DNA of 64,000 bases, from positions 68,285,767 to 68,349,766 of the forward strand of contig NC_133617.1 in the NCBI RefSeq assembly GCF_048593235.1. Direction: 5' to 3'. Made by a program: the position numbers and the translations under genes. The notes under the pieces are model-generated. The model was given only the letters and a program-made list of their open reading frames with translations. It did no database searches and was not told the DNA's origin. The first letter of the stretch is position 1. Each line of letters begins with the position of its first letter. Below are positions 8,366 through 62,636 of the stretch, in pieces. Origin of the DNA: Sminthopsis crassicaudata (lineage: Eukaryota).

Positions 8366-9014
8366 NNNNNNNNNNNNNNNNNNNNNNNNNNNNNNNNNNN
8401 NNNNNNNNNNNNNNNNNNNNNNNNNNNNNNNNNNNNNNNNNNNNNNNNNNNNNNNNNNNNNNNNNNNNNNNNNNNNNNNNNNNNNNNNNNNNNNNNNNNN
8501 NNNNNNNNNNNNNNNNNNNNNNNNNNGTAAGGAAAAGGTCGAGATAGGATGAGATTAAAAAGTAGAGGGACAGGGATTGTGGGAATAATTTCTTATAAAG
8601 AGACTAGAAAGAATGGGATCATGAATAAAAGTAGTGGAGTTGATCTTTGTGAGGTTAAAGTCCATTTCTTTATCAAAGACTGGAGTAAAACAGAAAAGAG
8701 TAGGGATAATACCAAAGGAGTCTGACATACAAAAAAAAATTAGGAATGAGTGGTTTTTAGCTGAGAGAGTAGAAAAAGTAGGTAGTGGTTTGGGAGACTT
8801 GAGAAGGAAAGAGCCAAAATAGCCCTTGTGATATAGCTTGTGATAGAGAATCAATTAGGAAGTGGTAAAAGAATTGTGTTGCTAAACTAATGGTCCAGTT
8901 TATATTAGAAAGCACAACTTCTAATTCAGTGGTCTGTATGGTTGAGTAATTTCTTCTTTGAGTGATTTAATTAAATTAAACAAATATATTTGATTAATAG
9001 CAATCAATAAACAA

Positions 9015-42826: not shown

Positions 42827-45800
42827 TCACTCCTTAAGGGAGAAGTGCATCTTGTCATTGATCATCTTGCGCTCCGGGTTGAGGCGCTTCAAGATCTGGG
42901 CCAGCACGTTGACTGTCTGGTCACTGCTGAGCCCCGTCTTCTTGGTCTGGAACTTCTTCAGCAGGTCCTTGGTGGTCATGGGCTTTCGGGTCAGGTAGCG
43001 CCTGACCGCGTCCTCTGTCACCTGCACATCACTGGGGGGAGAAAGGTCAGGGTCAGAGGGTGGAGGCTCTGCTGTCAGTCCCAGAAATGGCCCCTGACTC
43101 ACCTATTGCAGCCCAGCCCAGGCCCCTCCCCCCAATGGGTCCTGATTCACACACTGCTGCCCAGCCCAGGCCCCCCCTTTCCCCCTCCCCGCCAAATGGC
43201 CCCTGACTCACCCACTGCTGGGCGTGGACTTGCCAGACTGAGGCTGGGGGGTGGATTTCCCTGAGATGCTCTGAGGCCCCGCATCCAGCCTCAGGCGCTT
43301 GGCAGCAGGTGTATCACTGGGTCCCGTCTGGCGCTTCCCTGCATGGAACCATCCAACCTCCAGGTCAGAGCTGGAGGGGTCTCTCAAAACTCAGGCTTCT
43401 CTACAGCTGAGCAGGAGCCCCTTCTTCAGGACCCTCAGAAAGCCTCCCCAACCCCTCTCTCTCAGAGCCAGAGGATGGGGATTCAAGCTCGGACCTGCCT
43501 CCCTGGGCCTTGCTTCCAAGGCCCACACCATCCTAGCCATCTTCCTCTGGGCTGCCCCCCCCACCCCATCACTGTTCGCACAAAGTGGGCCCCAGGACTG
43601 AATGAATACTGCAGTGGTGGAGGACGGGGCGCTCTCCCCTCCCGGGTCTGAGTCCCTATACCCCCAAAATGAGCTTCTCTGGCCTCAGAGGGGCCAACAG
43701 AACCTCCCAAAGCGAGAAGCTGGGAAAGTGCCCAAAAAGAGGAGAGAGACAGGGCCCAGGAGCGGGCTCCTGGGGGACACGATCTCATGGGGGAGGGGTA
43801 GAGACCGGGGTCCACCTCACCTTGCTCCAGCTTGCTGGCGGCTGCCCGCAGGGTGGAGGACGTGCTGCCGCTGTCCACACTGGGAGTGCTAGGGCGGCTG
43901 TTGCCCCTGGAGCTGCTGCCTGAGGCCTTCCGCTCCCTCTTGGGGGGAGTCTTCTTCTTCTGCACAAAGGGGCAAGGGAGACTGAGCTGGGGAAGGCAAA
44001 GACGAGCCCACCCCCCCGTTGGGGTCCCCCCAGACCATACTCACGGTCATGAAGAGGGCCGAGGACGCCTCGTTGTCGATGTCACTCTCCTCGGAGGTGT
44101 CCGACTCCTCGCTGCTGTCTCCTGAGGGCCAAAAGGGAGCCTGAGTCCCGGGGCCGGCCAAAGGGGCACCTCACCCAGACTCTGCAGCCTCAGGGAGCTG
44201 TATAGAACCAAGCCCAAGCAGCAGCCGGGGCTCCAGAGAGGGGACCTGGGGGAGGCAGGGAAGTTGGAGGAGCCAGAGGGGTTTCTGGGGGAGGAAGGAG
44301 AGCTTCTGGGGCCTCCAAGTGCATTTCCCCCAGCAGCTCAGGGGCCAGGGGAGAGGATGGGGACTAAGCACAAGGAGAGCAGGAGTCTGAGAAGGGAGGG
44401 GCAGGGACCCGTCAGCCAAGAGGGCATCTGGGACGGCCATGGGAACACCGGCTGTGCAGAGGCAGCGTGAAGGCCTCGAATGCCGGGCCGGCTCCTCCTC
44501 CAGCCATTGAGCTCACCTTTCCTCCTCTTCTTCTCCTGTGGGTTGGGGGCCTTCTTATCTTCTTCCTCCTTCTCCTCCTCCTCAGGGGGCTTCTCCTCCT
44601 CACTCTCCTCACTGCTTTCACTTTCCTCATCAATGCCTGAGGGGGAAACCAGAGGGTTCTCCTGGTCCAGGGACCCCGACCTGCCCCTGCCTTCGGCTCT
44701 GCTGCCAACTGGCACCCCGAGACTTAGCCTGGGCTTAAAGCATCCTCTGCAGCTAAAGGCCTGTGGCTCTCTGCTCCCCTTCCCAGCCTTCCTCACAGAA
44801 AGTGTTCCCTCCCCTGCCACTGCCTTCTCAGCTCCTTACAGGAGCCTGGCTTTTGGAAGCAAAAATGACTCCATTTTGCAACCACTGTCATCAAGGTTGC
44901 CATTGGTCTCCTAATTATTAAACATAATTGCCTTTTTCTCTTTCCAACTGGATGCTGCACACATGCATTTCCAATTCAACGTAAGGAAAGCAGAGTTTAT
45001 CACATCCCTCCCACACCCCACAATCCTCTAACTTCCCTATATCTTTCTTTCTTTTAAAAATTTTCTCCATTGATGATCCAGCCATTCTGGAGAATAATTT
45101 GGAACTATGCCCAAAGGGCTATAAAACTGCATATACTTTGACCCAGCAGTGCCATTACTGGGTCTGTATCACAAGGAAATCATAGAGGAGGAAACGTGCC
45201 TAAATGTTTGTGGCAGCTCTTTTTGTAGTGGCAGGGAACTGGAGACTGAGTGGCTGCTCACTAATTGAGGAATTGCTGAACAAACTGTGGTACATGAAGG
45301 TAATGGAATATTCGTTCTATAAGAAACAATGAGCAGGATGATTTCAGAACTGATGCTGAGTGAAGTGAACAAAACCAGGAAGTGACTGTAACAGTAACAG
45401 CAAGGTTGTATGATGATCAACTGTGAAAAACAGCTCATCTCATCAATGTGGTAGTTCAAGACAATTCGAATAGACCTGGGATAGAAAATGTCATCTATAT
45501 CTAGAGTCTCCGCTACGGAAACTGAATGTGGATCAAAGCATGCTATTTTCCCCTTTTTTATTTGTTTGCTATTTCTTTCTCGTGGATTTTTTCCCTTTTG
45601 GTCTGATTTTTCTTGAACAACATGATGCATATGGAAATATGTTTAAAAATGTCATATATGTCTACTCTATGTCCGATTGCTTGCTCTACTGAGGAGGATC
45701 TGGAACCCAAAACCTTACAAAAATAAGTACTGAAAACTACTTTTGCATGTAGTTTGGGGGAAAAAATACCACTGATATAAAAACAATTTTCCCCCAATTT

Positions 45801-48800
45801 CTTTTAAGAGTTCAAGATTGTAAGCTTGAGTTGTTCCATTCTTTCCTCTCCCTCACCACTTATATAAAGAGAGTTGTCACTTTATTTCTAATTACTCTTT
45901 GTCCTCTCCATTCCTAATTTAGATCCTCATCCTTTCTTACTCAGATTTCTCCAACAGCCTCCTCTCCTGTCTCCTTGCCTCCAATGCTGCCCCCCCCACC
46001 CATCCTCTAGAATTCAGCTTCTTAAAACTGGGTTGTGACCTCATTTGGGATGATGTAACTCAATGTGGGGGGGGGGCCTATTTACTGTACTTTACCCACA
46101 ATGGCTGAGCCTTTGAACAGGCCAGGAGCCCTCCTTTGCTTGGGATGCTCAGCTCAGTTCAACGCTCTACTCACGCCGACGCTTCCCATTTGAGACCTTT
46201 TTGGATCATAACTGTGAACCTCCTTCCTAAAGTTACTTTGAATTGCACCTCTCTGAGTCCACATTCTCCCAAGTACAACGTCAGCCCCTTGAGGGCAGGG
46301 CCTTTTTCTCTCAAGCACAAGGCTCCTCAGTGGCCGGCGTTTAACCAGTATTGGCTGACCTGCTCTGCCCTGAATATCCTGGTCTTCACAGGGAAAGGCA
46401 AAGAGAAGGATGGGTCCTGCCCTCAGGCCCACACCTACCTTTAGGGCCGTCCTCCTCCTGCTGGACCACCTTGGTTTTCCCTACTGCCTCCTCCTCAGAG
46501 CTGCTGCAAGGGAAAGAACAGGCTGCAGGTGAGCAGGTTGTGGCGGGGGCTCCGAGTCTGGAAGGAAGAAGGGGGTCTGGAGCCTGTGTCCCTTACCTGG
46601 AGCCATCTGACATGTAGTCCACCTCCTGGCCCTCAAAGTCCCCATCATCGCTGTCCTCAAAGGCCTCATCATCAGAGCCCTTCTTCTTCTTCTTCTTGCC
46701 CCCCCTGGAGGGAGCCGCCTTCTTCTTGCTCTTGGGGACCTTCTCTCCTGGGGAGAGCAGGGGAGGTCAGGGCCTACACTGTGCCGGTCCCTGATCCCTG
46801 GGGGCCTTTCCCCCAGCACACCCACAGCCCCGCCCCCATCCTCACCCTCCTCCCCACTGCTGTTGCTGTCCTCAGAGCTCATCTCCAGGTCGTCCTCCAG
46901 GTCATGGATGCGGAGCTCACTGGGCTTCTTCCGGCTCTTCTTCTCTTTATGCTCATCTTCATCCTCATCGTGGTCCTGGTCCTTCAGCCGCCGCTGCTGC
47001 ATGATGCTGAAGTGGTTCAGGACTTTGTTCCTCCTGCAAACAAGGCTGTGCATCATGCAGGGTCTCCGGGAGGGGCAGCCCTTCTACCAGGAAGCCCTCC
47101 CTGACTGAGGACGCCCAGCTCAGAACTCTCTGCCTCCCCTCAGGGCTCAGGCCCAGTTTGTTTGCACTGGGAGGTGTGTCTGTCTGTCTGTCTGTGGCTC
47201 TTCCAAAGCCGAGAAGCAGGGGCAGAACCCTTCATACGGAATCAGGAAAGTGACAGAGGATCCCCTGCCGTGATCTTCCCCTGGATCCTTGGATCACAGA
47301 AGTCGAGCCGGAGCAAGCTCAGAAGTCCTCTGGCCAAGATCTCAGAGGCAGGAGAGGACTGTCCCCATTACTAGCTCTCTGACCCAGGCTGTGGCCAGGA
47401 GGAGGCAGAGGACACGTGGAGGAGCCTGAGGCAAAGGCTGAGCAGGGAGCACGGCTGCCCCGGGCCCTGCAGGCTGCCCTGACTGACACACAGGCTCCCC
47501 CGCGGGGGATGGGCCCTCCCCGTCTCCCTGCCCGCTCACCTCTCCCATTCCTCCTCGGCCTCCTCGGCCGTGAGCGTCCGGTGCCGCGCCAGAGGGGTGA
47601 AGTTGTACCAGTTGTGCACAGGGAAGGCTTCGAAGGCCCCGTCGGGGCACTGGGTGAAGATGTAGTACGAGGTGTTTTCCGTCACCCCGCCCTTCTTCAC
47701 TCCCTTGAACCTGCAGCAGGCAAGAGGAAAGGGGACAAAGATGTCTTCCCTGCCGGGCCCTGCCAGGCCTGCGGGGCTGCTCCTCAGAGGGCCCCCCTCC
47801 TCTCAGCCTGGAGCCCCAGGCACCGACAGGCCTGGAACATGGCCCGGGATGGGGCCGGAGCCTCGGGGCCGAGCCTCGTCCCCCAAAGCTGGGAGAATGT
47901 TCCAGTCCCGCTCCCCCTCCCAGGAGGGACAAAAGGCCAGAACCCGGGCCAGGGCCCCCCCGAGGCCGCTCACCTCCTGCCCGTTTTGCCATTGACTTTG
48001 AGTAGCCAGGGCTGGTCTTCAGCCTTGAAGGCCTTGAGGATGATGCCGTACTTCTTCCTCCTGGCCTCGTCCCGCAGCTTGCGATTGAACTCGCTGCCGG
48101 CCCCGGACTCCGGCATCTCCTCCTCCTGGTAGATCTTCTTGTTGCTCAGGTCCCGCTCCATCTTGGCCTGCGGGGGGAAGCCACCTCGTCTGGGGGCCCC
48201 GGCCGGGCCTGGGGGGCCTCAGCTCCCCCGCCCCCGCCTGCCTCCTCCGGGCCCTTCCTAACCTCTTACCCTCGGTGTCCTTCAGGGCCGTGACTTATTT
48301 TTGCACTGCAGTGTTTAGTTACACACCCTGGAGGGTGTTTCCTTTATACCTTGTTAGGTATCCTGACAGACTGAGCACACAGAAGGGCTCTAATGAGTGC
48401 TGGGCAAACTGAAAGAGGAGGAAGATGCCCTTTCTGGTACCCGTGTACCCCTGCGCCTGGAAATCCCCAAGCCCTCCTGCCTCCGGCTCAAAGCCCTCAG
48501 AGCTCTCCTGGTCCCGGACTCTTACCTGGTGCCAGGTGGAGAAGTTGACTTTGTCCGCTGCGTTGAAAGCCATGATGTTGTACCTCTTGAGGTTGTTCCT
48601 GTGGGAGCAGAATTGTGAGCCCTCAGGAAAAGTCGGTGGGGGAAGAGAAAAGGACTGAAGCTGGGACTTGGGCTGCCCGGCCCATGCCTCCCCTGCCCCT
48701 GCCCCTCCCGGCCGGCAGAACTCACTTGGGAACTCGAACGACATACTCGGTCACAGTCTGGCTGCTGGTCCCCTGCACAGAGAGAGTGAGTCAGGGAAGC

Positions 48801-49035
48801 GCGCCACTTTAAAATGCCGGGGTCCAAAAGAAGCGCGTGGGTGCGGGGCACAGCCCCTGCCCGGGTACAAGGGGTACGTACACACAGCCCCCCCCAGGGA
48901 CTCCGGGGAAGGCGCGGAGCTGCAGTGGCCACACCCACCAGGCAGAGGCCGCTCCCAGAGGGTCAGAGCCGCTCCCGCGGGTCCCACACACCTGCACAGC
49001 GCTGCTCCCATCCACCCACTCACCAAGCTCGTCAT
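42827..49035 (-). CDS. GTF2F1: General transcription factor IIF subunit 1 (RAP74), ~520-522 aa. 13 exons: 49035-49024, 48772-48726, 48598-48526, 48167-47974, 47710-47540, 47033-46846, 46747-46597, 46503-46439, 44636-44517, 44121-44045, 43959-43821, 43338-43212, 43031-42827
   Basis: MTSL|GTSSQTVTEYVVRVPK|NNLKRYNIMAFNAADKVNFSTWHQ|AKMERDLSNKKIYQEEEMPESGAGSEF...|FKGVKKGGVTENTSYYIFTQCPDGAFEAFPVHNWYNF...|...DVQVTEDAVRRYLTRKPMTTKDLLKKFQTKKTGLSSDQTVNVLAQILKRLNPERKMINDKMHFSLKE*. All junctions are GT-AG and phase-compatible; total 1569 nt. Confidence 0.98.
45070..45785 (+). mobile_element. Old L1 3' end in GTF2F1 intron 8 (antisense to the gene)
   Basis: ccattctggagaataatttggaactatgcccaaag...gcagctcttttt ORF2 C-terminus plus marsupial L1 3' UTR. 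Confidence 0.8.
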
Positions 49036-50450
49036 CTTGTCCAAAGCTGGGCCCGCTGCGTGACCGCGTGGAGGGTCAAAAGTCGTAGCGCATCCGGCTC
49101 CTAATCTGCCCCCCGAACCCCGATGCGACTACGATGCGGGCCAGGTTCCTACCTCAAACAAGGAAGAGCCACCGAGGGAAACTTGGAGTCCCAGCAAGCG
49201 CTGCGGTTTGACCCGGAAACTAAACTTTCCGCGTCGTCGTCTTGACTACCTTTAGCGGCCTTAGGGGAGTGGCTCAAGCCCGACCCAAGCGGCGGGCCAT
49301 TGCAAGCGTCCGAGTTTGTGCAAATCTCTGTCTCCGGGGCCCAGCCTTTCCCCACAATGTAGACAGGCCTGGGTGTCGCGCTGCGCGGGCGGAATGGGTC
49401 CCTTCCCCATCCTCGGTCGTGGGAAGGAGTCAATCGGGCTTCATTAATTATTCATGAGGCGGCAAATTTTCTGCGCGGGCCGGACTAATCTAGCATTTCC
49501 TGTGTCGTTGTTGTCGTATAGAACCATACGGGCATTCGCAGGATTTTCGTTGCAGTGCGGCGCATTTCGGGATTCGTAGTTCTTGAATCTCCTGGACACG
49601 GAGAAGAGCCCGAGCCCTTTGCGCAGGCGCACTCTCACCGCTGTTTCGTTGCGTTGTCACGGCAACTGCGAGGCCATGGCAACTGCATTCTAGGCTTCCC
49701 CTCCCTTCCCCCTTCCTGGAAACTACAGCATCCACCTCTAGACCTGATGTGGACCTTAGGGGGTCTGTTCCCACCCTCCCTGCGGCACAGCCTGTGACAA
49801 GTACCCAGTCAGCGCTGCTGAGAAACCTGCCCGAGCGGGAGGAGCCGCCGTGCTCCTTTGTACCGCGCGGCCAGGAACTGCTCTAGCAAGCTTGCGTTTG
49901 CCTCATGGATGCTGCCCCCTGTTTATCCCCTTCGGCGCCAACCCTCCTTCCAAAGCGCTGAAAGCGAGGAGCCCGTCAGTCCTCCGTGGCAGTCCTCCGG
50001 GACGCCCCCGCTCCTCAACGCCCCAACATGGGGTCCCCGGGTCCGGGCGCAGCAGCACAGCCGCAGCCGCGGCTTCAGTTACTCTGCCGCGTTATTCCGT
50101 TCTCTCGTATTAAAACTGGAGCCCAACAAGGGACACTCCGACTGCGGGAGCGCGTTTGGGGGAGGCGGGTCACGGGGTGACTGAGGAGGGAAGGCCGAGC
50201 CTTCCGAGCTTGTCCGGGCTGGGAGTGACATCTCGCTCCCAGAAACTCCGCCCGCCCTACTTCTCTCCCCTTCTGGAGATGCTGACTCCTGCAGGAGGGC
50301 CCTTCAGCCTTGCGTAGTGCTAGAAACAGAGTAGCGCTCAGCGGGGGGTCCCTCCCGCCCGCAAGCAGTCGTCCGGCTTCAGCCTTGGAAAGCGGGACTG
50401 GGGGCGCGCTGCCGGGCTCCGGGTGGACCTCCCAGCTGAACTGACTTTCC
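48700..50450. promoter_or_regulatory. CpG-island promoter of GTF2F1, with NRF1 motif (TGCGCAGGCGCA, 49620-49631), ZNF143/THAP11-type motif (AACTACGAATCCC, - strand, 49569-49581) and ETS site (~49213)
   Basis: Extended CpG-rich tract spanning exon 1 and ~1.4 kb upstream; motifs read directly. Confidence 0.75.
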
Positions 50451-51029
50451 CTTATCGCCTCTCCTGAGCCGGGGTTGTGCAGTGATAGGGTTTTGTGGCG
50501 CCTGATATGTGATCCCTTAGCGGTCTAGGCAGTTCTCTCAGACTGTGTGGCAGAGAAGATGCTGGCCTGCATTGGTAGAGGGAATTTTTTCATTTGGGAT
50601 TTCCCTAAAATAATGGAATCATGCTCCCAGAATTCATCCCCATCTCTTCCTTAGCAAACCTTAAGTTCCACCACCAAGATTTTTTCCCCTTGTTCCTTCC
50701 TTTCTCCTCTAGTATTTTACTCCAAAGATCACTCTCTGGAACAACGGGAATTCTTTCCTTGGAGGCAGGCTTTCTGATCAGTGAGATTTTCTATATCAAG
50801 CCAGCCCCAGACCCTATTTTGGGCCTAATCTTGTTTTGAAAGTTAACCAGATGAACTCTACATTGCATCTGAAAAGGGCACATTGATTCATTATCCCACA
50901 ACTCACCCTCCGAAACTTCCCAAACCTCCTCCTTGGGGTCAAATTGTGAAGGGCTTTAAAAGCCAAGAGGGGCCCACCAGAGAAATCACATGACTGGGTA
51001 ATCACTAACCATTTTGGCTGCTGTGTGGA

Positions 51030-54400: not shown

Positions 54401-54526
54401 CCTGGCTTAGACCCCAGACTCCACGCCCCACTAAGCTATGTGTTCTTGGACTTGAGTAAGTCTTTGACTTTGACTCTCTGTACCTCAGTTTCCCACCTGA
54501 AAAACAAAAGGTAAGACTACTTTAGG

Positions 54527-54765
54527 AATTCTTAACTCAGGGTATATGAATTTTTAAAAATTTAGCTATTTCAATATAATTCATATATAAATCTGTATGT
54601 ATATTTATACACATACCTACATATATAAACATAAACACATAGACTTACATACATGAATGTATGTCTATATGTGTATGTGTGTATTTGCATTTAAACATTT
54701 TTCTGAAAAGAGATCCATAGCCTTTACCAGACTGCTCCTTGACACAAATAGGGTTTGGAACTCCC
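54527..54765. mobile_element. Probable hAT (Charlie/MER5-like) non-autonomous DNA element
   Basis: aggaattcttaac...gtttggaactc termini resemble cagggg..cttaac TIRs; AT-rich core. Confidence 0.35.
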
Positions 54766-55053
54766 GGATTAAATTATCTCTAAGATTTCGTCCAGATTCT
54801 GTGTTGGCTCCCAGAGTCCAATGCTACTCTCTTTTCCTGGCCCATGTATGTCTCTTTTCCCTCCCCACCCAAGGTAAGGGCAATAGTAGGGGCCACAGAG
54901 TTCCTTATGACATCAGAAAGCTGGGGGAGCAGAGGTGGGAGGGTAAAGAGGGACAGAAAGGCTGAGTTAGGACCAAAGGGGTTCTGGAAGTACAAGATCC
55001 AGGAGGGAGAAGTTGGCGGGCAGGGTCATTAAGCCCCCAGGGCTACTGGGAAG

Positions 55054-58000
55054 ATGGGCAGATGCCATTCCAAGCTGCCCCAGGTGGGAAAACCCCTGAG
55101 GCCTCAGCAGAAGGGTAAATCTCTAGGCACCCTCCTGGGGGCTCAGCTTCTCCCTACCCTATCCACATGCCCGTGGCCAAGCGGAGGGGGCCAGGATCCA
55201 GGCAGAAAGCCCAGTACCTTTCCTTGAGTTGGGGAAGAAAAGTCGAGGGGACACCATTGCAGCCTTCCTCTTGTTTAGTGCAGGTTGGAGGATAGTGCCA
55301 GCCTTGCAATCAGAAGGCCTGGGTTCAAATCTTTGGCAAAGACCAAGTCTTAGTTTTCTCATTGTATGAGACCATATGATCCTCGCCAGCTCTGCATGGT
55401 ATAAAAGGGGGCATCCCCATTCTGTATGCAGCAAGCACAAGAGTAACCATGCACATACATGTGCCAACTGCATACAGCTTACCTTCTTCCTCCCGCTCCC
55501 CAGATCTGCTCAAGTCTTACCGGATCATCTTCGTAATGGGGGGACCAGGATGTGGCAAGGGGACACAGTGTGAGAACATGGCAGCCAAGTACGGCTTCTG
55601 CCACGTGGGCCTTGGGGAGCTTTTGAGGGAGGAGGCAAATCAGGCGACTGTGCGGGGCCAGCTGATCCGGGACATCATGCTGAAGGGCCTGCTGGTGCCC
55701 ACGGTGAGGACCCAGCGTTTCCCCCTGCTCCCCACAGCGCTGCCTTTGTGGCCAGAGCCTAGAGGGGTTGGACGGGGTCCTTCCTCATGGCATCTCAAAG
55801 GGCTCTTCTGTGGCCCATAGGAACGGAACGGGCCACTATACCCATTTCACAGATTTGGGTGATTGTGTCCTTGGGCCTGGGTAACTAATTGCATGGGGTG
55901 GAAAATCAGGCTCCATTTTTCAGATATAACTGAAGCAGCTGTGGAAAGAGCCAGGTGTGGAGCAGTCAGATTGTTTAAATCTCGGGGGTGGAGGGGGTAG
56001 GTCTCAGTTTCCCCAGCTGTAAACGCCGTGGTTCCCATGATATAAAGGCTCCCAAAGTTCCCTTAGCAAGTTAGTGCAGGACCCCACACAGCCTCCCTAA
56101 TGCCCAGTCTCTGCCCCACAGGGTGTGATTCTGGACATGGTGAGTGACAACATGTTGTCCCGCCCAGACAGCAAGGGCTTTCTCATAGATGGATTCCCTC
56201 GGGAGCTCAGCCAAGCCAAGGAGTTTGAGCGCATTGTAAGTGTCTGCTTCCTCCCAGCCTCCGCCGGCTCAGCCATCTTCTTGGCCCACCTCCCACCCCC
56301 CACTTTATTAATAATTCTGAGGAAAACCTGAGATTCCAGCGCTCACCCAAAGTCTGGGGATGCCGCACCCCTCCTTCCCAATCCGGCCATCTCCCTCAAT
56401 CCCCCTTCCTTCCAGAGCAGGCTGCCGCTTTTTTTTTTTTTTTCCTGAGGCAATTGGGATCAAGTGACTTGCCCAGGGTCACACAGCTAGGAGGTGTTAA
56501 GTGTCACATTTGAACTCAAGTCCTCCTGACTTTGGGCTGAGCTCTATCCACGGCGCCACTGAGCTGCCCCTAAAGCAGGGCTTCTTAAACTTTTTCCACT
56601 CCCTTTTTGCTCAAAAAAAATTTTTACATGACCCTCAGGCATATAGGTATATAAATAGGCCTATAAATCAAACACTTATTGATAATAAATCACAGTCTAA
56701 TAACCCCCATGTTCAGTTATGTGATTCCACATGGGGTCAAGATCTGCTTTGTTGTAGAGAAATCACCTTTAAGGGGTCTGGGACAGGAAGTGGAGTGTGA
56801 AGAAGGGGCGTGTCATCCAGTAGCTGAGGACCTGAACCAGGCCATGCAGATGCAGCCAGCGCAGAATTTTCCTATTTCGGGTCAAAGAACAGGGAATTGC
56901 AAAACAGAAAGATCCTTTTAGTCTTTGGAGTCCTTCTGCAGTCTTTCCAGTATTTATTAAGCGCCTACTGTGTGCCAGGCACAATATAAAGAATGGCAAA
57001 AGACAGTTCCTTTTTTCAAGGAGTCATAATGTAAAGGGAGGCAACATGCCAACAAATAGGTCCAAACAAGCAAGCAAAAGTCACAAGTTACCGGATGGAA
57101 TCAACAGAGGGAAGGCATTAGAATTAGGAGGGACTGGAAAAGGTGGCAGAGAATGCCTGGTTGGATGAGTTGAAAACAGGGAGAAAGGCGATCTTTGGAA
57201 AGGCAGTGCAGTGTGCTAGAAAGAACTTGGAGTGAGAGTCTGCGCTCCCTTAGGACCTGTGTAATGGCAGGCAAGTTGCCTTCGGTCTCACAGCCTCACT
57301 GGTCCCATCTGTAAAACGAGCCAGTTTGACTCAATGATCTCTAAGATCTCCAGATCTAAAGTGATGAAATTAAAGCAAAATGCAATAAATTTGGGCTGAA
57401 TTTCTAAAGAAAAAAAAAAATAGATTCAGAGCCTTGGAATTTAGAAACCAAGACCATGATGTGATGATCTTGGGCAATTAAAAAAACAGCTTTTCTTTGC
57501 CTATCACTTTTATTTCCAAATCTATGCCTTGCAACAATGAATTTAAAAAGTAAAGAAAAAGTTGGTCAGCAGAAGACCTCGTTGTAAATTGCTTAGTTTC
57601 TTTAAACATAAGTTTGCTTTTGAGTCCAAGTCATGTCTGACTCTTTGTTGAGTCTGTTTGGGATTTTTCTTGGCAGACATACTGGAGTAATTATGCCACT
57701 TCCTTGTCTGGCTCATTTTTACAAATGAGGAAACTGAGGCAAACAGGATTAAATGCCTAGGGTCACACAGCTCGTGTCTGAGGCTGGATTTGAACTCAGG
57801 GCCTCCTGACTCTAGGGCCAACTTTTCCATCTTGCTACCCATAAAAACATAACTTTCCCCGTTGTGTAAAAATGGAGACACACAACTTATCAGAATTGTT
57901 ACCAAAAAAAAAAAATACAACACTTTGTAAAAGTTGCTATAAAAACTTGATTTTTGATATTACCTATAACAACAGTAATAGTTCTTAATCTGTATAGTGT

Positions 58001-60548
58001 TCTACAGTTTACAGAACATTTTCTTAAGAACAGGATTTTTGGGGGGGATTCCCATTTTATTCCCATTTTACAGATGGAAAACCAGGGCCCGCAAAGTTTG
58101 AGGTAAGTGACTTAGAAAGGTCACACAGGCATGTGTTTCATAGTTTTTTGAGATACGAGAGACCTAAAAAATCATTTAGCTCAAACTTAATCATTTTACA
58201 AATGCAGAAACTGAAGCCCAGAAAGGGAAAGTTTGAGTTTTGAACCCAGACCTTCTGATTCCCTGTCCGTTACTCTTCCTTTGACATTCTCAGAAGCAGT
58301 CTCAGAGTTAAAAAATACAAACAGCCCCCCCTCCCTCCAAACCTACTCAAGAAGGCTAATTTGGCTTTTACTACTACTGTGACTCTGGGCAAGTTATTAA
58401 GTCTCTTCTCAGTTACCTCATCTGTAAAATGGGGCATTAATAGTACCTGCTTCCCAGGTACCATTTTGGATCAAAAGCTTAGAGCACAGGGCCTGGAGCC
58501 TAATAAACACTATGTAAATGTTACTACTCATCACCATTATCATTACTGATTTTACATGTGTGGGTGAGCCAACCTGTACACGAGTAGGATTGCTCCCTCT
58601 GACACCCCCAAGCACGGCCATCCATTCTCCTCTTGAGCACCTCCAAAGGCAGGGCCCTGATTCTTGGAAGGCCCATCTGCCCTCTTCACAACTGCTCCTA
58701 ACTAGGCCCTCACTGCTCCCTCAGTCAGCATCTGAGACTGGAGGGGGACAGCGAGGGGGGACCCCTGCAGCCTCTTCCCTTGCCTCACCCCACCAGGTGG
58801 GCCGCTCCCCCAACATCGTCATCGTCTTTGACTGCTCCACGGAGACCATGATTCACCGGGTGTTGCTTCGAGGCCAGGAGGAGCACCGTGAAGATGATGT
58901 GGAGGACATTGTACGCCAGCGGCTGGAGACCCATTACACCCTGTGCGAGCCCATCCTGGCTTTCTACCAGCAGAAAAACCTTCTCCGGAATGTAGGTGCT
59001 CCTACGGCCTGTGCTCAGGCTTTCCCCTGTAGAAGTGAAGGGGGGTGTGTGTGAAGTATTCCCTGCTGGGAGAGGGCTGAGGAAAAGGGGAGGGTCTCTG
59101 CTTCCATTTACAGGAAAGTCTGGAGGGCAGCAGAATAAGAAGCAAACCGAAAGATCCCAGCCCAGGACTGGGTCCAACAGTGGCCCAGCCACTTGGTTTG
59201 TGACCTAAAGCAAACCATTTCCCCTCTTTGAAGCTTTTCATTTCAAGATTGTAAGATAAGGGGGGGCGGGCTGGATGATGTCTAAGTTCCCTCTGCACTC
59301 CAGCATTCTGTGTACTATGAGCTCAGGTTCCCCTGACTCATTTAACATTCTACATTCTGTGATCTGAATTCCTTCTAGCTCCATTAGTCTGAGTCATAGA
59401 ATCTTAAGTTGGAAGGGAGGGGACCCCAAGGCCCAGCTCAACCTCTCCTGAACCCCACCCAGCCTGGAAAATGCCATCCAGGTTGGGCTTGGAGGCAGAC
59501 CCCTTGCAGGCAAGCCACTCGACCTCTGTTTGCCTCGGTACCTCATCTGCAAAGTGGGGAACAATGTGAGGAGGATTGATAGATAATAAAGTGTCTGGCA
59601 CATAGTAAGTGCTATACAAATGTTTATTGTTATTATTAGCTGTTATTAGTGAGGCACAAGTCACTGGTCTGAGCATCCCATCCCATTCTAACATAGCTCT
59701 AATTATGTGGTAGTTTTTCATCACCTCAAACTTAAATTTGTCTACTTACAACTTCAACTCATTGTTCCTAGTTCTGGGACTTTCCCTTTCAATGACTCAT
59801 TTTTTTTCCACCTGAAAAATGGAAAAGGGAACAGAGTTTTGTCCCCTGAGAATCCTGGGCAGTTATGAGTGCCCTAAGATACCCACGTTAGCCAGGGATG
59901 AGCTGCCACTCTTTTTGGGTCCAAGTCACTGCCCCCTCTGTAGGTCTGTTTTAGGGGGGTGCTCATTTCCAGTTCTGATATCCCATGATTTATTCTCCTC
60001 TTCAGCCATTTTAAAATAGAAAATTACTTTTTAAATTTATAGCCAGTGAGAGGTGATTACTGCTAATCTTGTTAGCAAACCATAAGCTGCATGATATCTT
60101 CTTCAGCTCTTGATCAGAATTATCAGAAAGCAGCCTAGAGCAGGGGACACAGATCTAGCTTCCCCCTCTGATGTTGAAATGGCATGTTAGATGTCAGGTT
60201 GGGCCTGCATTTGAAGTCAGAGCAATGTGGATTTAAATCCTGACTCTCAAATTTGTTCTGCTCGTGTGATCTTGACATTATTTCTCAGTTTCCTTATCTG
60301 AAAAATAAATGGGGTTGATATCTGAAGTCCCTGACAACTCTGCCTCCCATGACAAGTAATCCCCATTTCTGGGCATGGGGTGGTGGTAGTGATGCACTTG
60401 GGGGGAAGTAAGGACAGGGGTCCCTCCTCACGTGGCCTGGACCTGACCCTTCCCCCTCCATACCTACCACCTCCTTCAGATCCTGGCAGAAGATGCTGCA
60501 GAAAATATCTTTGCCAAATGCTGTTCCGTCATTGACAGTCTGCAGTAG
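55054..60548 (+). CDS. Uncharacterised adenylate kinase isoenzyme 1-like (AK1/AK5/CMPK short-LID family) protein, 212 aa. Exons 55054-55114, 55504-55703, 56122-56235, 58797-58991, 60480-60548
   Basis: Spliced product MGRCHSKLPQVGKPLRPQQK|DLLKSYRIIFVMGGPGCGKGTQCENMAAKYGFCHVGLGELLREE...GLLVPT|GVILDMVSDNMLSRPDSKGFLIDGFPRELSQAKEFERI|VGRSPNIVIVFDCSTETMIHRVLLRGQEEHREDDVEDIVRQRLETHYTLCEPILAFYQQKNLLRN|ILAEDAAENIFAKCCSVIDSLQ*. It has a P-loop, DG(F/Y)PR and R-x3-R-x5-R-x-DD motifs, no stops or frameshifts, and canonical splice sites. Exon 1 is chosen by phase match and strong Kozak (aagATGg), so it is less certain than exons 2-5. Confidence 0.92.
55400..55407 (+). promoter_or_regulatory. Consensus TATA box (TATAAAAG) in intron 1 of the AK1-like gene; possible alternative promoter
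   Basis: Perfect TATAAAAG followed by G-rich flank, about 42 nt before an in-frame ATG (55449, aaccATG). Confidence 0.35.
56428..56570 (-). mobile_element. WSINE1-type SINE in AK1-like intron 3
   Basis: Poly-T then cctgaggcaattggg..gtgacttgcccagggtcacacagctagg...gctgcccc. Confidence 0.85.
56576..56750. mobile_element. Probable hAT-family MITE
   Basis: Starts cagggcttcttaaactttttccactc, with gaccc/ggggtc internal motifs typical of Charlie-type elements. Confidence 0.4.
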
Positions 60549-61589
60549 AACCAGAGGCCCTCCCCCTACCCCCACTGGAGGACCACAGCTCCAAGATGCT
60601 CACCGCCAGGACAGCCCAGAGCCTCAGCATTACCAACAAACACTTCCTGGGGCCCTCCATGAGGTAAAAGGGAGGGGGCCTGGGATATCCCTGTACAGCA
60701 AAGTCGAGCAACGCAACGGGCCAGGCCCGTGTTCCCCGAGCATCACCTAAAACACCCGCGTTAGCCAGGGATGGTCAAGTCCCAAGGGCCGGTCCTGCCA
60801 CTCTTTTTGGGTCCCAGTCACCACCCCTCTGTGGGTCTGTTTCAGGAGTGCTCCCCTCCAGTTCTGATAACCCATGATTTATTCTCTCCTTCAGTTCTCG
60901 ATCAGAATTATCAGAAGGCAGCCGAGAGTAGTGGAATAGAGTAGGGGAAACAAGAAAATTGGATTCCAATCCCATGTCGAAGTCTAACTTACTGGGCGCC
61001 CCGGACACATTGTCTTGCTGGTTGTCTCTCTCTATAAGATATTATGGGCACCTATGGGCAGTTGGACAAGTGCCAGTGTGGAGACTGGGCGACCCGGGTT
61101 TAAATCAGGATTCAGATGCCTGCTAGCTGCGTGAGCCTGGGCAAGCCCAGCGACCTGTGGAGCCTTTTTCCTCAACTATAAAACAGCTAATATAATTCTC
61201 GTGCCATCTAATACTTCAAGGGGTTGTCATGAAGAAAGTGCATTATGAGTCCTACAGGGCTCTAGAGAAGGAGACAGTGCTTTCCCATCCTTGGAGGACC
61301 GAGATGGCCGGCCTCTTTTCCAAGGGTTAATGGGGGTGTAGAGACAGTAGTCTGTGGTACAATGGGAAGAATAATGACTTTCAGAAGACCAGAGTTTGAC
61401 TACCAGCTCTGGGCCACTGTGGACAAGTCACAACCTCCCAGGGTGCTCCATTCCCTCTGTAAAATCCAGCCCCAAACCCTGTGATTCTCATGTAACCAAT
61501 AGCTGATACCCTGAAAAGCAAAGCTGCCTGACTGTACTCACGTCTCCCTTCTCTCCTCAAGACTACACTGTGTCTCCTTAGAGGGTTGC

Positions 61590-61922: not shown

Positions 61923-62636
61923 NNNNNNNNNNNNNNNNNNNNNNNNNNNNNNNNNNNNNNNNNNNNNNNNNNNNNNNNNNNNNNNNNNNNNNNNNNNNNN
62001 NNNNNNNNNNNNNNNNNNNNNNNNNNNNNNNNNNNNNNNNNNNNNNNNNNNNNNNNNNNNNNNNNNNNNNNNNNNNNNNNNNNNNNNNNNNTTCTAGGGA
62101 ATGAAACAGGAAAGGCATTTGATGTCTAGCCCCAGTTACCCAAGTTCTCACTGTACTGCTTTTTAGTACATGGGGAAAAGTAAAAGTTCAGTTTAAAATC
62201 CCACTGTTTTGAAGATTTATCACTTCCTAGTAAAAACACATAAAAATGCTAAGTTCTAAGATCTGGTCACTAGAACAGAATTGATTCTTCTGATTTTTTT
62301 TTTTTTTTTTGTACTTTTATTTCAGCTAACTGCTGGCATCTCCCATCAGCCCACTATGTATTCCACTAATGAACAAACAGGCCACCCACAAATGTTATGT
62401 TCAACCATAGCTTTTATGTGAAGAAAAAATCAAAATAAAGAAACAACTTAAACCTAGTGAGGAAACATATCACAAATTGATGCCAGCTAGTGACCAGCAA
62501 TGGGGAAAGGAAATTTGGAGAGAGGACATTTTTTAACCCTTTCTCAGCCTCTTGAAGAGAAATGGTTTGGTTCAGTCTCCTTTCTTAAGGAATTTTATAT
62601 AAGGAATTTTATTATATATTCCTTATTTATATAAGG

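What the first reader, a model, noticed from the sequence alone, without database searches (positions are those of the whole stretch)
55054..60548. Intact, uncharacterised AK1-like adenylate kinase paralogue
Seen: a complete 5-exon, 212-aa ORF with canonical splice sites. Established: the AK1 catalytic set (P-loop Lys, Arg44, Asp93, Arg97, Gln101, Arg128, Arg132, Arg138, Asp140/141, Arg149 in human AK1 numbering) all has counterparts here, and the intron positions match AK1-type positions except that the two short AK1 5' coding exons appear as one 200-nt exon. It is clearly divergent from AK1 itself and sits in the GTF2F1 synteny block. From memory (needs verification), human has only a poorly supported 'adenylate kinase isoenzyme 1-like' locus (LOC390877) in this interval. 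Inference: an old, overlooked extra short-LID NMP kinase, functional in marsupials and possibly decayed in some eutherians.
Basis: partly seen in the sequence, partly recalled or inferred. Interest (0 to 1): 0.75.

Follow-up and report, generated by a model that had tools for sequence, protein, structure and literature searches.

The report
Unstudied tetrapod paralogue of adenylate kinase 1
This is a real, intact and selectively maintained extra copy of the energy enzyme adenylate kinase 1. It is at least as old as four-limbed vertebrates, annotation pipelines already call it 'AK1-like', no study has examined it, and it has decayed in monkeys, gibbons, whales and a lynx.

Summary
Five GT-AG exons on the + strand (55054-55114, 55504-55703, 56122-56235, 58797-58991, 60480-60548) encode 212 aa. 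[quoted passage not shown]

It is a single-domain, short-LID adenylate kinase:
- Pfam ADK scores 142 bits.
- The AlphaFold model (pLDDT 93) matches human AK1 bound to AP5A at 1.3 Å.
- All 11 AK1 catalytic residues are kept.

It is not AK1:
- It is 42-46% identical to AK1.
- It fails NCBI's AK1 equivalog cut-off (214 against 284 bits).
- Its tetrapod clade has 100/99 support and lies outside AK1.
- It sits between GTF2F1 and KHSRP from alligator to rat and next to KHSRP in a caecilian, with the same exon sizes throughout.
- It shares four of AK1's five intron positions, so it is not a retrocopy.

dN/dS is 0.05-0.14. An N-terminal MGxCxS leader is conserved, so it is probably a lipid-anchored AK like AK1β.

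Catalytic arginines are lost in gibbons, Old World monkeys, whales, camel and lynx. No bird, frog or fish orthologue was seen.

The nine-isozyme literature omits it, and no paper studies it. It is a new member of a known kind, of moderate interest.

The parts
55054..55114 (+). Coding exon 1 (61 nt, ends in phase 1). It holds the start codon and a 20-residue leader beginning MGRCHSK, which is an N-myristoylation-type Gly2/Ser6 plus Cys4.
   Evidence: Searches give the Kozak context and the upstream in-frame stop. Among 19 full-length amniote orthologues, G2 is kept in 19, C4 in 18, S6 in 17, and P9, L15 and P17 in 19.
55504..55703 (+). Coding exon 2 (200 nt). It holds the P-loop GGPGCGKGT and the NMP-binding segment with R62. 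It equals AK1's 36-nt and 164-nt exons fused.
   Evidence: Pfam ADK E 1.4e-16; AK5 and AK1 structures E 4e-20 and 3e-19; intron comparison.
56122..56235 (+). Coding exon 3 (114 nt). It holds D110, the GFPR motif with R114, and Q118. Some RefSeq isoforms (174 aa) and the macaque models skip it.
   Evidence: Pfam ADK E 2.9e-8.
58797..58991 (+). Coding exon 4 (195 nt). It holds the short LID with R146, R150, R156, D158, D159 and R167.
   Evidence: Pfam ADK E 8.8e-7; AK1 structures E 4e-12.
60480..60548 (+). Coding exon 5 (69 nt including the TAG stop). It encodes the C-terminal helix, with a clade-typical ILAE...IFAKCCSVIDSL tail.
45054..49035 (-). The 5' part of the neighbouring GTF2F1 gene (TFIIF_alpha), arranged head to head with the AK gene.
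   Evidence: the gene called at L001:1-3982 carries PF05793. L001 coordinate + 45053 = window coordinate.
49000..50500 (.). CpG island, taken to be the GTF2F1 promoter. The AK gene's own start region is CpG-poor.
   Evidence: CpG o/e is 0.74-0.93 here, against 0.11-0.16 at 54500-55500.

Best explanation
Window 55054-60548 holds the dunnart orthologue of a tetrapod gene that pipelines label 'adenylate kinase isoenzyme 1-like' (mouse Gm17949 by name transfer, human LOC390877). I call it AK1L here.

Shown:
- It is a five-exon, 212-aa, single-domain, short-LID adenylate kinase.
- It has a complete AK1-type catalytic set and an AK1-like predicted fold.
- It is a paralogue of AK1, not a copy nested inside it.
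- It keeps a fixed place between GTF2F1 and KHSRP and a fixed exon structure from caecilians to mammals.
- It evolves under strong purifying selection in marsupials and rodents.

Inferred:
- It catalyses ATP + AMP <-> 2 ADP, as AK1 does.
- Gly2 is myristoylated and Cys4 palmitoylated, so the enzyme works on the cytoplasmic face of membranes, as the AK1β isoform of AK1 does. Here the lipid leader is the gene's only start rather than an alternative one.
- The CpG-poor promoter suggests tissue-restricted expression.
- The split from AK1 most likely dates to early vertebrates.
- The gene was later lost or inactivated several times: in catarrhine primates, cetaceans, camel and lynx, and apparently in birds, frogs and fishes.
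For: Gene and identity:
- Model and splice sites; identical to XP_074165588.1; locus in assembly GCA_048593235.1.

Family and fold:
- Pfam ADK 142 bits. AK1 198 bits, AK5 184, CMPK1 115 against solved chains.
- AlphaFold pLDDT 93, pTM 0.90. Best fold match is human AK1-AP5A, TM 0.94, rmsd 1.3 Å.
- Catalytic residues are kept in the dunnart and in at least 18 of 19 amniote orthologues.

Paralogy and age:
- The AK1L clade (amniotes, salamanders, caecilians) has 100/99 support and lies outside a 95/81 AK1 clade.
- Echidna, softshell turtle and a caecilian each carry both AK1 and AK1L.
- The arrangement GTF2F1(-) | AK1L(+) | KHSRP(-) holds in platypus, alligator, turtle and rat; in Mus caroli only GTF2F1 was identified by Pfam. 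KHSRP is adjacent in a caecilian.
- Exon sizes are conserved. Four of AK1's five introns are shared.

Selection:
- dN/dS is 0.05-0.06 for dunnart-antechinus at dS 0.07, 0.07-0.12 for mouse-sloth, and 0.08-0.14 for dunnart-sloth.

Leader:
- The leader is conserved. AK1β-type MGxxC leaders run from rays to dog. AK1β is reported as myristoylated and on the plasma membrane (PMC2680645).

Expression in a relative:
- The rat T2T paper lists 'adenylate kinase 1-like' at Chr9:6.77 Mb with IsoSeq support (PMC13477028). This fits the rat locus at 6.65-6.67 Mb between Gtf2f1 and Khsrp.
Against:
- No enzymology exists for any member.
- The NMP-binding pocket differs from AK1 at positions invariant or nearly so in AK1: S38->G56, T39->L57, E65->L83, Y95->F112. 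AMP specificity is therefore assumed, not shown.
- The marsupial leader has Arg at position 3, which strict myristoylation patterns disfavour.
- The residue after the P-loop lysine varies across the clade (G, A, E, N, D), and two caecilians have Arg in place of that lysine. The sloth has R156W. Some lineages with an open frame may therefore already be inactive.
- Timing is not settled. A tetrapod-only duplication is disfavoured but not rejected (AU p 0.06), and a split after the lamprey divergence is not rejected (p 0.25). AK5 could not be placed.
Confidence: 0.72

Rival explanations
1. It is an active nucleoside-monophosphate kinase whose substrate preference has shifted away from AK1's strict AMP/ATP pair, for example to dAMP, CMP/UMP or another phosphate donor. 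Retuning of the NMP pocket would be the cause.
For: There are clade-wide changes at pocket positions that are invariant or nearly so in AK1: S38->G, T39->L/I/M, E65->L, L69->T, D70->G and Y95->F. The stem leading to the clade is long, at 0.55 changes per site.
Against: Q118, the counterpart of AK1 Q101, is present in 19 of 19 amniote sequences, as are R62 and R114. The protein scores far higher against AK1 (198 bits) than against UMP-CMP kinase (115 bits), and it is below the UMP-CMP family cut-off (154 against 208 bits).
Confidence: 0.15
2. It is a catalytically weak or dead adenylate-kinase-like protein, kept for a non-enzymatic role such as membrane scaffolding or nucleotide sensing.
For: The P-loop is relaxed in parts of the clade: GKA, GKE, GKN and GKD, plus K->R in two caecilians. 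The leader is conserved beyond what an acylation signal needs, at P9, L15 and P17. The gene has been lost repeatedly, which shows it is dispensable.
Against: In the dunnart and most mammals every catalytic residue and a canonical GGPGxGKGT loop are kept. dN/dS is 0.05-0.14 over the whole length. The model superposes on the closed, inhibitor-bound AK1 structure.
Confidence: 0.08
3. It is a recent retrocopy or segmental copy of AK1, or a decaying pseudogene in the dunnart.
For: None beyond the family resemblance.
Against: It has four introns at AK1 positions. Its clade is separate and its internal branching broadly follows the species tree. Synteny is conserved from the caecilian (KHSRP side) and amniotes to the rat. 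dN/dS is 0.05 against antechinus. The frame is open, with every splice site canonical.
Confidence: 0.01

Closest known systems
AK1 (cytosolic adenylate kinase isoenzyme 1)
   Same: Single ADK domain with a short LID and the same 11 catalytic residues. Four of five coding introns share position and phase. The predicted fold lies 1.3 Å from human AK1-AP5A.
   Different: Only 42-46% identical. Below the TIGR01360 AK1 equivalog cut-off. Separate clade and separate locus, and it coexists with AK1 in echidna, turtle and caecilian. It lacks AK1's intron in the P-loop codon 15. Several NMP-pocket residues differ.
AK1β (myristoylated, membrane-bound product of the AK1 gene)
   Same: About 18 extra N-terminal residues begin with Met-Gly and have a cysteine within the first five residues. 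They are joined to the core at the same phase-1 junction, and total length is about 208-212 aa. PMC2680645 reports AK1β as myristoylated and located at the plasma membrane.
   Different: In AK1 the leader exon is one of two alternative starts. In AK1L it is the only full-length start found in the models. The cysteine is at position 4, not 5. The rest of the leader (LPQxG+xLRPQ) is specific to the clade and conserved. Acylation of AK1L is untested.
AK5
   Same: It belongs to the same short-LID subgroup. Exon 2 scores marginally better against the AK5 domain 2 structure than against AK1.
   Different: AK5-type proteins have an N-terminal docking segment and two AK domains; this protein has one domain and a lipid-type leader. 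Over the full length, AK1 outscores AK5 (198 against 184 bits). No bona fide gnathostome AK5 was available for the tree, and the AK5-like sequences that were added gave an unresolved position.
UMP-CMP kinase (CMPK1)
   Same: Short-LID NMP kinase fold.
   Different: Much more distant: 115 bits and about 30% identity. Below the TIGR01359 cut-off.

Membership tests
Adenylate kinase superfamily (Pfam ADK, PF00406) | Whole-protein score above the gathering threshold, with a full-length domain match | tested here: met
   142.1 bits against 26.8, covering profile positions 1-150 of 151. Exons 2, 3 and 4 also pass singly.
Short-LID NMP kinases (AK1/AK5/CMPK type) | No long LID insertion, and a fold that superposes on short-LID structures | tested here: met
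   The alignment to AK1 has single-residue gaps only, apart from the N-terminal leader. The model matches human AK1 with TM 0.94 and rmsd 1.3 Å.
Catalytically competent adenylate kinase | P-loop Lys, the NMP-site and LID arginines, the Asp pair and the adenine-selecting Gln | tested here: met
   K39, R62, D110, R114, Q118, R146, R150, R156, D158, D159 and R167 are all present.
Catalytically competent adenylate kinase | Measured ATP:AMP phosphotransferase activity | not testable with these tools
   Needs recombinant protein.
AK1 proper (NCBIfam TIGR01360 equivalog) | Score at or above the curated cut-off of 284.1 bits | tested here: not met
   Dunnart protein 213.7 bits and caecilian orthologue 233.7. 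Echidna AK1, as control, scores 334.3.
AK1 proper | Falls inside the vertebrate AK1 clade and at the AK1 locus | tested here: not met
   It forms a separate 100/99 clade. It lies between GTF2F1 and KHSRP. AK1 and AK1L are both present in single species.
Tetrapod 'AK1-like' orthologue group (Gm17949 / LOC390877 type) | Clade membership, GTF2F1 adjacency, and 61/200/114/195/69 exon sizes | tested here: met
N-myristoylated / palmitoylated proteins (AK1β-like) | Met-Gly start with a small residue at position 6 and a nearby Cys | tested here: met
   The start is MGRCHSK. G2, C4 and S6 are conserved in 19, 18 and 17 of 19 amniote sequences. Arg3 in marsupials is atypical.
N-myristoylated / palmitoylated proteins (AK1β-like) | Lipid actually attached, and membrane localisation | not testable with these tools
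   Needs metabolic labelling and imaging.
AK5 | Two tandem AK domains behind an N-terminal docking segment | tested here: not met
   One ADK domain in 212 aa.
UMP-CMP kinase family (TIGR01359) | Score at or above 207.6 bits | tested here: not met
   153.6 bits.

The most novel reading that the evidence does not exclude
AK1L is a tenth vertebrate adenylate kinase isozyme and an early-vertebrate (whole-genome-duplication) sister of AK1. It kept the ancestral lipidated leader as its only start, so it is a constitutively membrane-anchored AK. It is functional in marsupials, mouse and rat but is a dead gene in catarrhine primates, so rodent models would carry a sub-membrane adenine-nucleotide enzyme that humans may lack. 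The duplication reading rests on my recollection of the human map: AK1 lies near FUBP3 on 9q34, AK5 near FUBP1 on 1p31, and this gene lies next to KHSRP (FUBP2) on 19p13.3.
Probability: 0.3. Interest if true: 0.6.

Novelty: new member of a known kind. Interest (0 to 1): 0.5.

Why it matters
Reviews count nine adenylate kinase isozymes (PMC10056885). This gene would be an unlisted tenth lineage: a paralogue at least as old as tetrapods, with a complete catalytic set and a conserved lipid-type leader. It is intact in the standard rodent models and decayed in Old World monkeys and gibbons. That makes it directly testable through a mouse Gm17949 knockout and recombinant enzyme work. It bears on how far rodent data on local ATP/AMP signalling carry over to primates. 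It is also a clean case of repeated gene loss. It does not reveal a new kind of enzyme or mechanism.

Tried and rejected
Tools that gave nothing:
There is no junction or tissue evidence for the dunnart.
- The wallaby protein P0082 had no contig on record.
- The exhaustive representative search was dominated by multi-domain AK proteins of protists and invertebrates. It yielded only a few useful single-domain rows, among them the newt orthologue.

Wrong turns:
- I first treated lamprey P0204 as AK5. Its second domain is 96% identical to a Petromyzon 'AK1-like' protein and 81% identical to echidna AK1, so it cannot stand for AK5.
- P0230 and P0254 best match the AK5 structure, but only at 167-182 bits. 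Adding them produced long-branch joins and an unresolved position. No CMPK1 row was available.

Not attempted:
- Salamander synteny, because their intergenic distances far exceed the 10-kb flank.
- The human locus: no human DNA was fetched or compared.
- The N runs at 8366-8526, 17853-18013 and 61923-62091 were left as they are.

The joined sequence was built only inside scripts, to translate it and compare it with fetched proteins. It was never sent to a search tool. Full-length searches used P0081, a database protein returned that proved identical to the model.

Readings rejected: retrocopy, recent segmental copy, and dunnart pseudogene (see rivals).


Full report
**What is in the window.** Reading 54800-60800 and assembling the frame gives five + strand exons: 55054-55114, 55504-55703, 56122-56235, 58797-58991 and 60480-60548. 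All are bounded by GT...AG. Together they make 639 nt, or 212 codons plus TAG. The start codon has a strong context (A at -3, G at +4) and an in-frame stop eight codons upstream.

**How the searches were run.**
- Exons 2, 3 and 4 each hit Pfam ADK alone.
- They also hit solved AK5 and AK1 chains.
- A window ORF containing exon 4, scored over the exonic region only, found 63 relatives.

The joined sequence was used only inside scripts and was never sent to a search tool. One database protein returned, P0081, proved identical to it. [quoted passage not shown] I used P0081 as the full-length reference. The window is therefore dunnart DNA, from assembly GCA_048593235.1, and the model is already a RefSeq prediction.

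**What kind of protein.**
- The full-length protein scores 142 bits on Pfam ADK.
- Against solved structures it scores 198 bits for AK1, 184 for AK5 domain 2 and 115 for UMP-CMP kinase.
- An AlphaFold model built on 51 sequences has pLDDT 93 and pTM 0.90.
- The best fold match is human AK1 with AP5A: TM 0.94, rmsd 1.3 Å, 44% identity.

I aligned 19 full-length amniote orthologues, 3 amphibian ones and 13 AK1 sequences. Each is kept in at least 18 of the 19 amniote sequences.

The consistent differences from AK1 lie in the NMP-binding segment. These are S38->G56, T39->L57 (hydrophobic across the whole clade), E65->L83, L69->T, D70->G and Y95->F112. The P-loop Ser is Cys in most amniotes.

**It is not AK1.**
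- Identity to AK1 is 42-46%.
- NCBI's AK1 equivalog model TIGR01360 gives 213.7 bits against a cut-off of 284.1. Echidna AK1 scores 334.3.
- In a careful maximum-likelihood tree of 58 domains, the amniote, salamander and caecilian proteins form one clade with 100/99 support on a long stem (0.55).
- Inside that clade the branching broadly follows the species tree, with some polytomies: amphibians, reptiles, monotremes, marsupials, eutherians.
- The clade lies outside a 95/81 clade that holds all gnathostome AK1 plus a lamprey sequence.
- Echidna, softshell turtle and a caecilian each have both genes.

**Synteny and gene structure.**
- GTF2F1 (TFIIF_alpha) lies upstream, head to head, in dunnart and antechinus.
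- The full arrangement GTF2F1(-) | AK1L(+) | KHSRP(-) is seen in platypus, alligator, turtle and rat.
- Mus caroli shows GTF2F1 upstream, and an unlabelled 742-aa gene sits where KHSRP would be. Sloth shows the same three-gene layout, but neither neighbour carries a Pfam label on record.
- In the caecilian Rhinatrema the gene lies tail to tail with KHSRP.
- Exon sizes are 61/200/114/195/69 in all seven amniotes examined, and 61/200/117/192/69 in the caecilian.
- Compared with a frog AK1 gene, four of AK1's five coding introns are shared in position and phase. Only AK1's intron in codon 15 is missing.

This excludes a retrocopy and fits an old duplication at the DNA level.

**Age.** The gene is at least as old as the tetrapod ancestor. 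The tree places the split before the lamprey-gnathostome divergence, but the stem is long.
- An AU test disfavours a tetrapod-only duplication but does not reject it (ΔlnL 18.2, p 0.06).
- It does not reject a split after the lamprey divergence (p 0.25).
- The lamprey row is domain 2 of a two-domain protein whose N-terminal half is AK5-like.
- I had no true gnathostome AK5, and adding two AK5-like proteins gave an unresolved position.
- From memory of the human map, AK1/FUBP3 (9q34), AK5/FUBP1 (1p31) and this gene/KHSRP (19p13.3) look like a whole-genome-duplication triplet. That is a lead and has not been tested here.
- No bird, frog or fish member appeared in three word searches or the exhaustive search. 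Clustering and list limits mean this suggests loss without proving it.

**Selection.** Pairwise dN/dS values come from exactly spliced coding sequences.

| Pair | dN/dS | dS |
|---|---|---|
| dunnart - antechinus | 0.05-0.06 | 0.07-0.08 (unsaturated) |
| Mus caroli - sloth | 0.07-0.12 | 0.9-1.3 |
| dunnart - sloth | 0.08-0.14 | 1.0-1.6 |

**Decay elsewhere.** In the predicted proteins of non-human species:
- Gibbons carry R114W, R150Q and R167S.
- Old World monkeys lack exon 3 and carry R150W, and most also have R156Q or R156W.
- Whales, dolphin and camel carry R62W; the whales and dolphin also have GKE in the P-loop.
- A lynx carries R62P, R114W, D158C and R167G.
- The sloth carries R156W.

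Lemurs, rodents, dog, horse, a bat, elephant, monotremes and marsupials keep the full set. Many of the changes are Arg to Trp or Gln, as expected from unconstrained CpG decay. These are gene models and should be confirmed on genomic exons. I did not examine human DNA. The literature shows only that LOC390877 carries the name 'adenylate kinase isoenzyme 1-like' (PMC10171165).

**The leader.**
- Exon 1 encodes MGRCHSKLPQVGKPLRPQQK. G2, C4, S6, P9, L15 and P17 are conserved across amniotes, and amphibians keep MGNC.
- AK1 genes from rays to dog have alternative products that begin MGxxC, with about 14-18 extra residues.
- A candidate leader exon lies in intron 1 of the frog AK1 gene. It would join at the same phase-1 junction that AK1L uses.
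- AK1β is reported as myristoylated and located at the plasma membrane (PMC2680645).

I infer that the ancestral gene already had a lipidated start, that AK1L kept it as its only start, and that AK1L is membrane-anchored. This is not shown. Arg at position 3 in marsupials is not ideal for the myristoyl transferase, although from memory the neuronal calcium sensors tolerate Lys there.

- The start region is CpG-poor (o/e 0.11-0.16), whereas the GTF2F1 promoter island at 49000-50500 has o/e 0.74-0.93. This suggests tissue-restricted use.
- In rat, a 2026 telomere-to-telomere assembly paper lists 'adenylate kinase 1-like' at Chr9:6,767,415-6,777,049. It appears among genes absent from the reference annotation but supported by IsoSeq (PMC13477028).
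- The rat orthologue lies at 6.65-6.67 Mb of a 110-Mb chromosome record, between Gtf2f1 and Khsrp. This is very probably the same gene.

**What is known.**
- Reviews count nine AK isozymes (PMC10056885).
- Full-text searches for the locus names found only table entries: 'adenylate kinase isoenzyme 1-like', LOC390877 and 'adenylate kinase 1-like'.
- Gm17949 found nothing.

The gene is therefore annotated but unstudied.

**Verdict.** One correction applies: annotation pipelines have not overlooked the gene. It is a new member of a known kind, of moderate interest.

Noticed in passing
window 45054-50500: GTF2F1 (TFIIF_alpha, minus strand) lies head to head with the AK gene, about 6 kb away. A CpG island at 49000-50500 (o/e 0.74-0.93) sits at its 5' end.
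   Followed up: partly
P0204 (Lampetra fluviatilis, 560 aa) and P0369 (Petromyzon): The lamprey two-domain protein has an AK5-like N-terminus and first domain. Its second domain is 81% identical to echidna AK1 and 96% identical to a Petromyzon 'AK1-like' isoform. Either one lamprey gene yields both AK5-type and AK1-type products, or the model is chimeric.
   Followed up: partly
P0359, P0360 (caecilians); P0221, P0356 (salamanders): The amphibian orthologues have unusual P-loops. The invariant lysine is arginine in Rhinatrema and Geotrypetes, and salamanders have GKD-I where AKs have GKGT. This hints at altered or lost catalysis in those lineages.
   Followed up: no
window 57553-57582 (intron 3); P0005, P0006: The koala and Dromiciops models carry 12-13 extra basic residues between exons 3 and 4. 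A weak match exists in dunnart intron 3, but read as an exon it would begin with a stop codon. It may be an alternative or poison cassette exon.
   Followed up: partly
L009:20367-20433 (Bombina AK1 locus): A candidate AK1β-type leader exon (MGAGCS..., with a GT donor in phase 1) lies inside intron 1 of frog AK1. MGxxC leaders occur in AK1 products from rays to dog.
   Followed up: partly
window 62434: This is the only AATAAA/ATTAAA found between the stop codon and the window end, which would imply a 3' UTR of about 1.9 kb if it is used. An N run at 61923-62091 lies in between and was left as it is.
   Followed up: no
window 56440-56560, 57700-57830, 58090-58250: Introns 2-3 hold several copies of a marsupial SINE-like repeat, recognisable by the motif 'gggtcacacagc...tttgaactcag...cctcctgac'. 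This was seen by eye only.
   Followed up: no
P0407 (Amazona aestiva): A parrot gene model fuses AK1 with a sialyltransferase domain (PF00777). It is probably a merged model of AK1 and a neighbouring gene.
   Followed up: no
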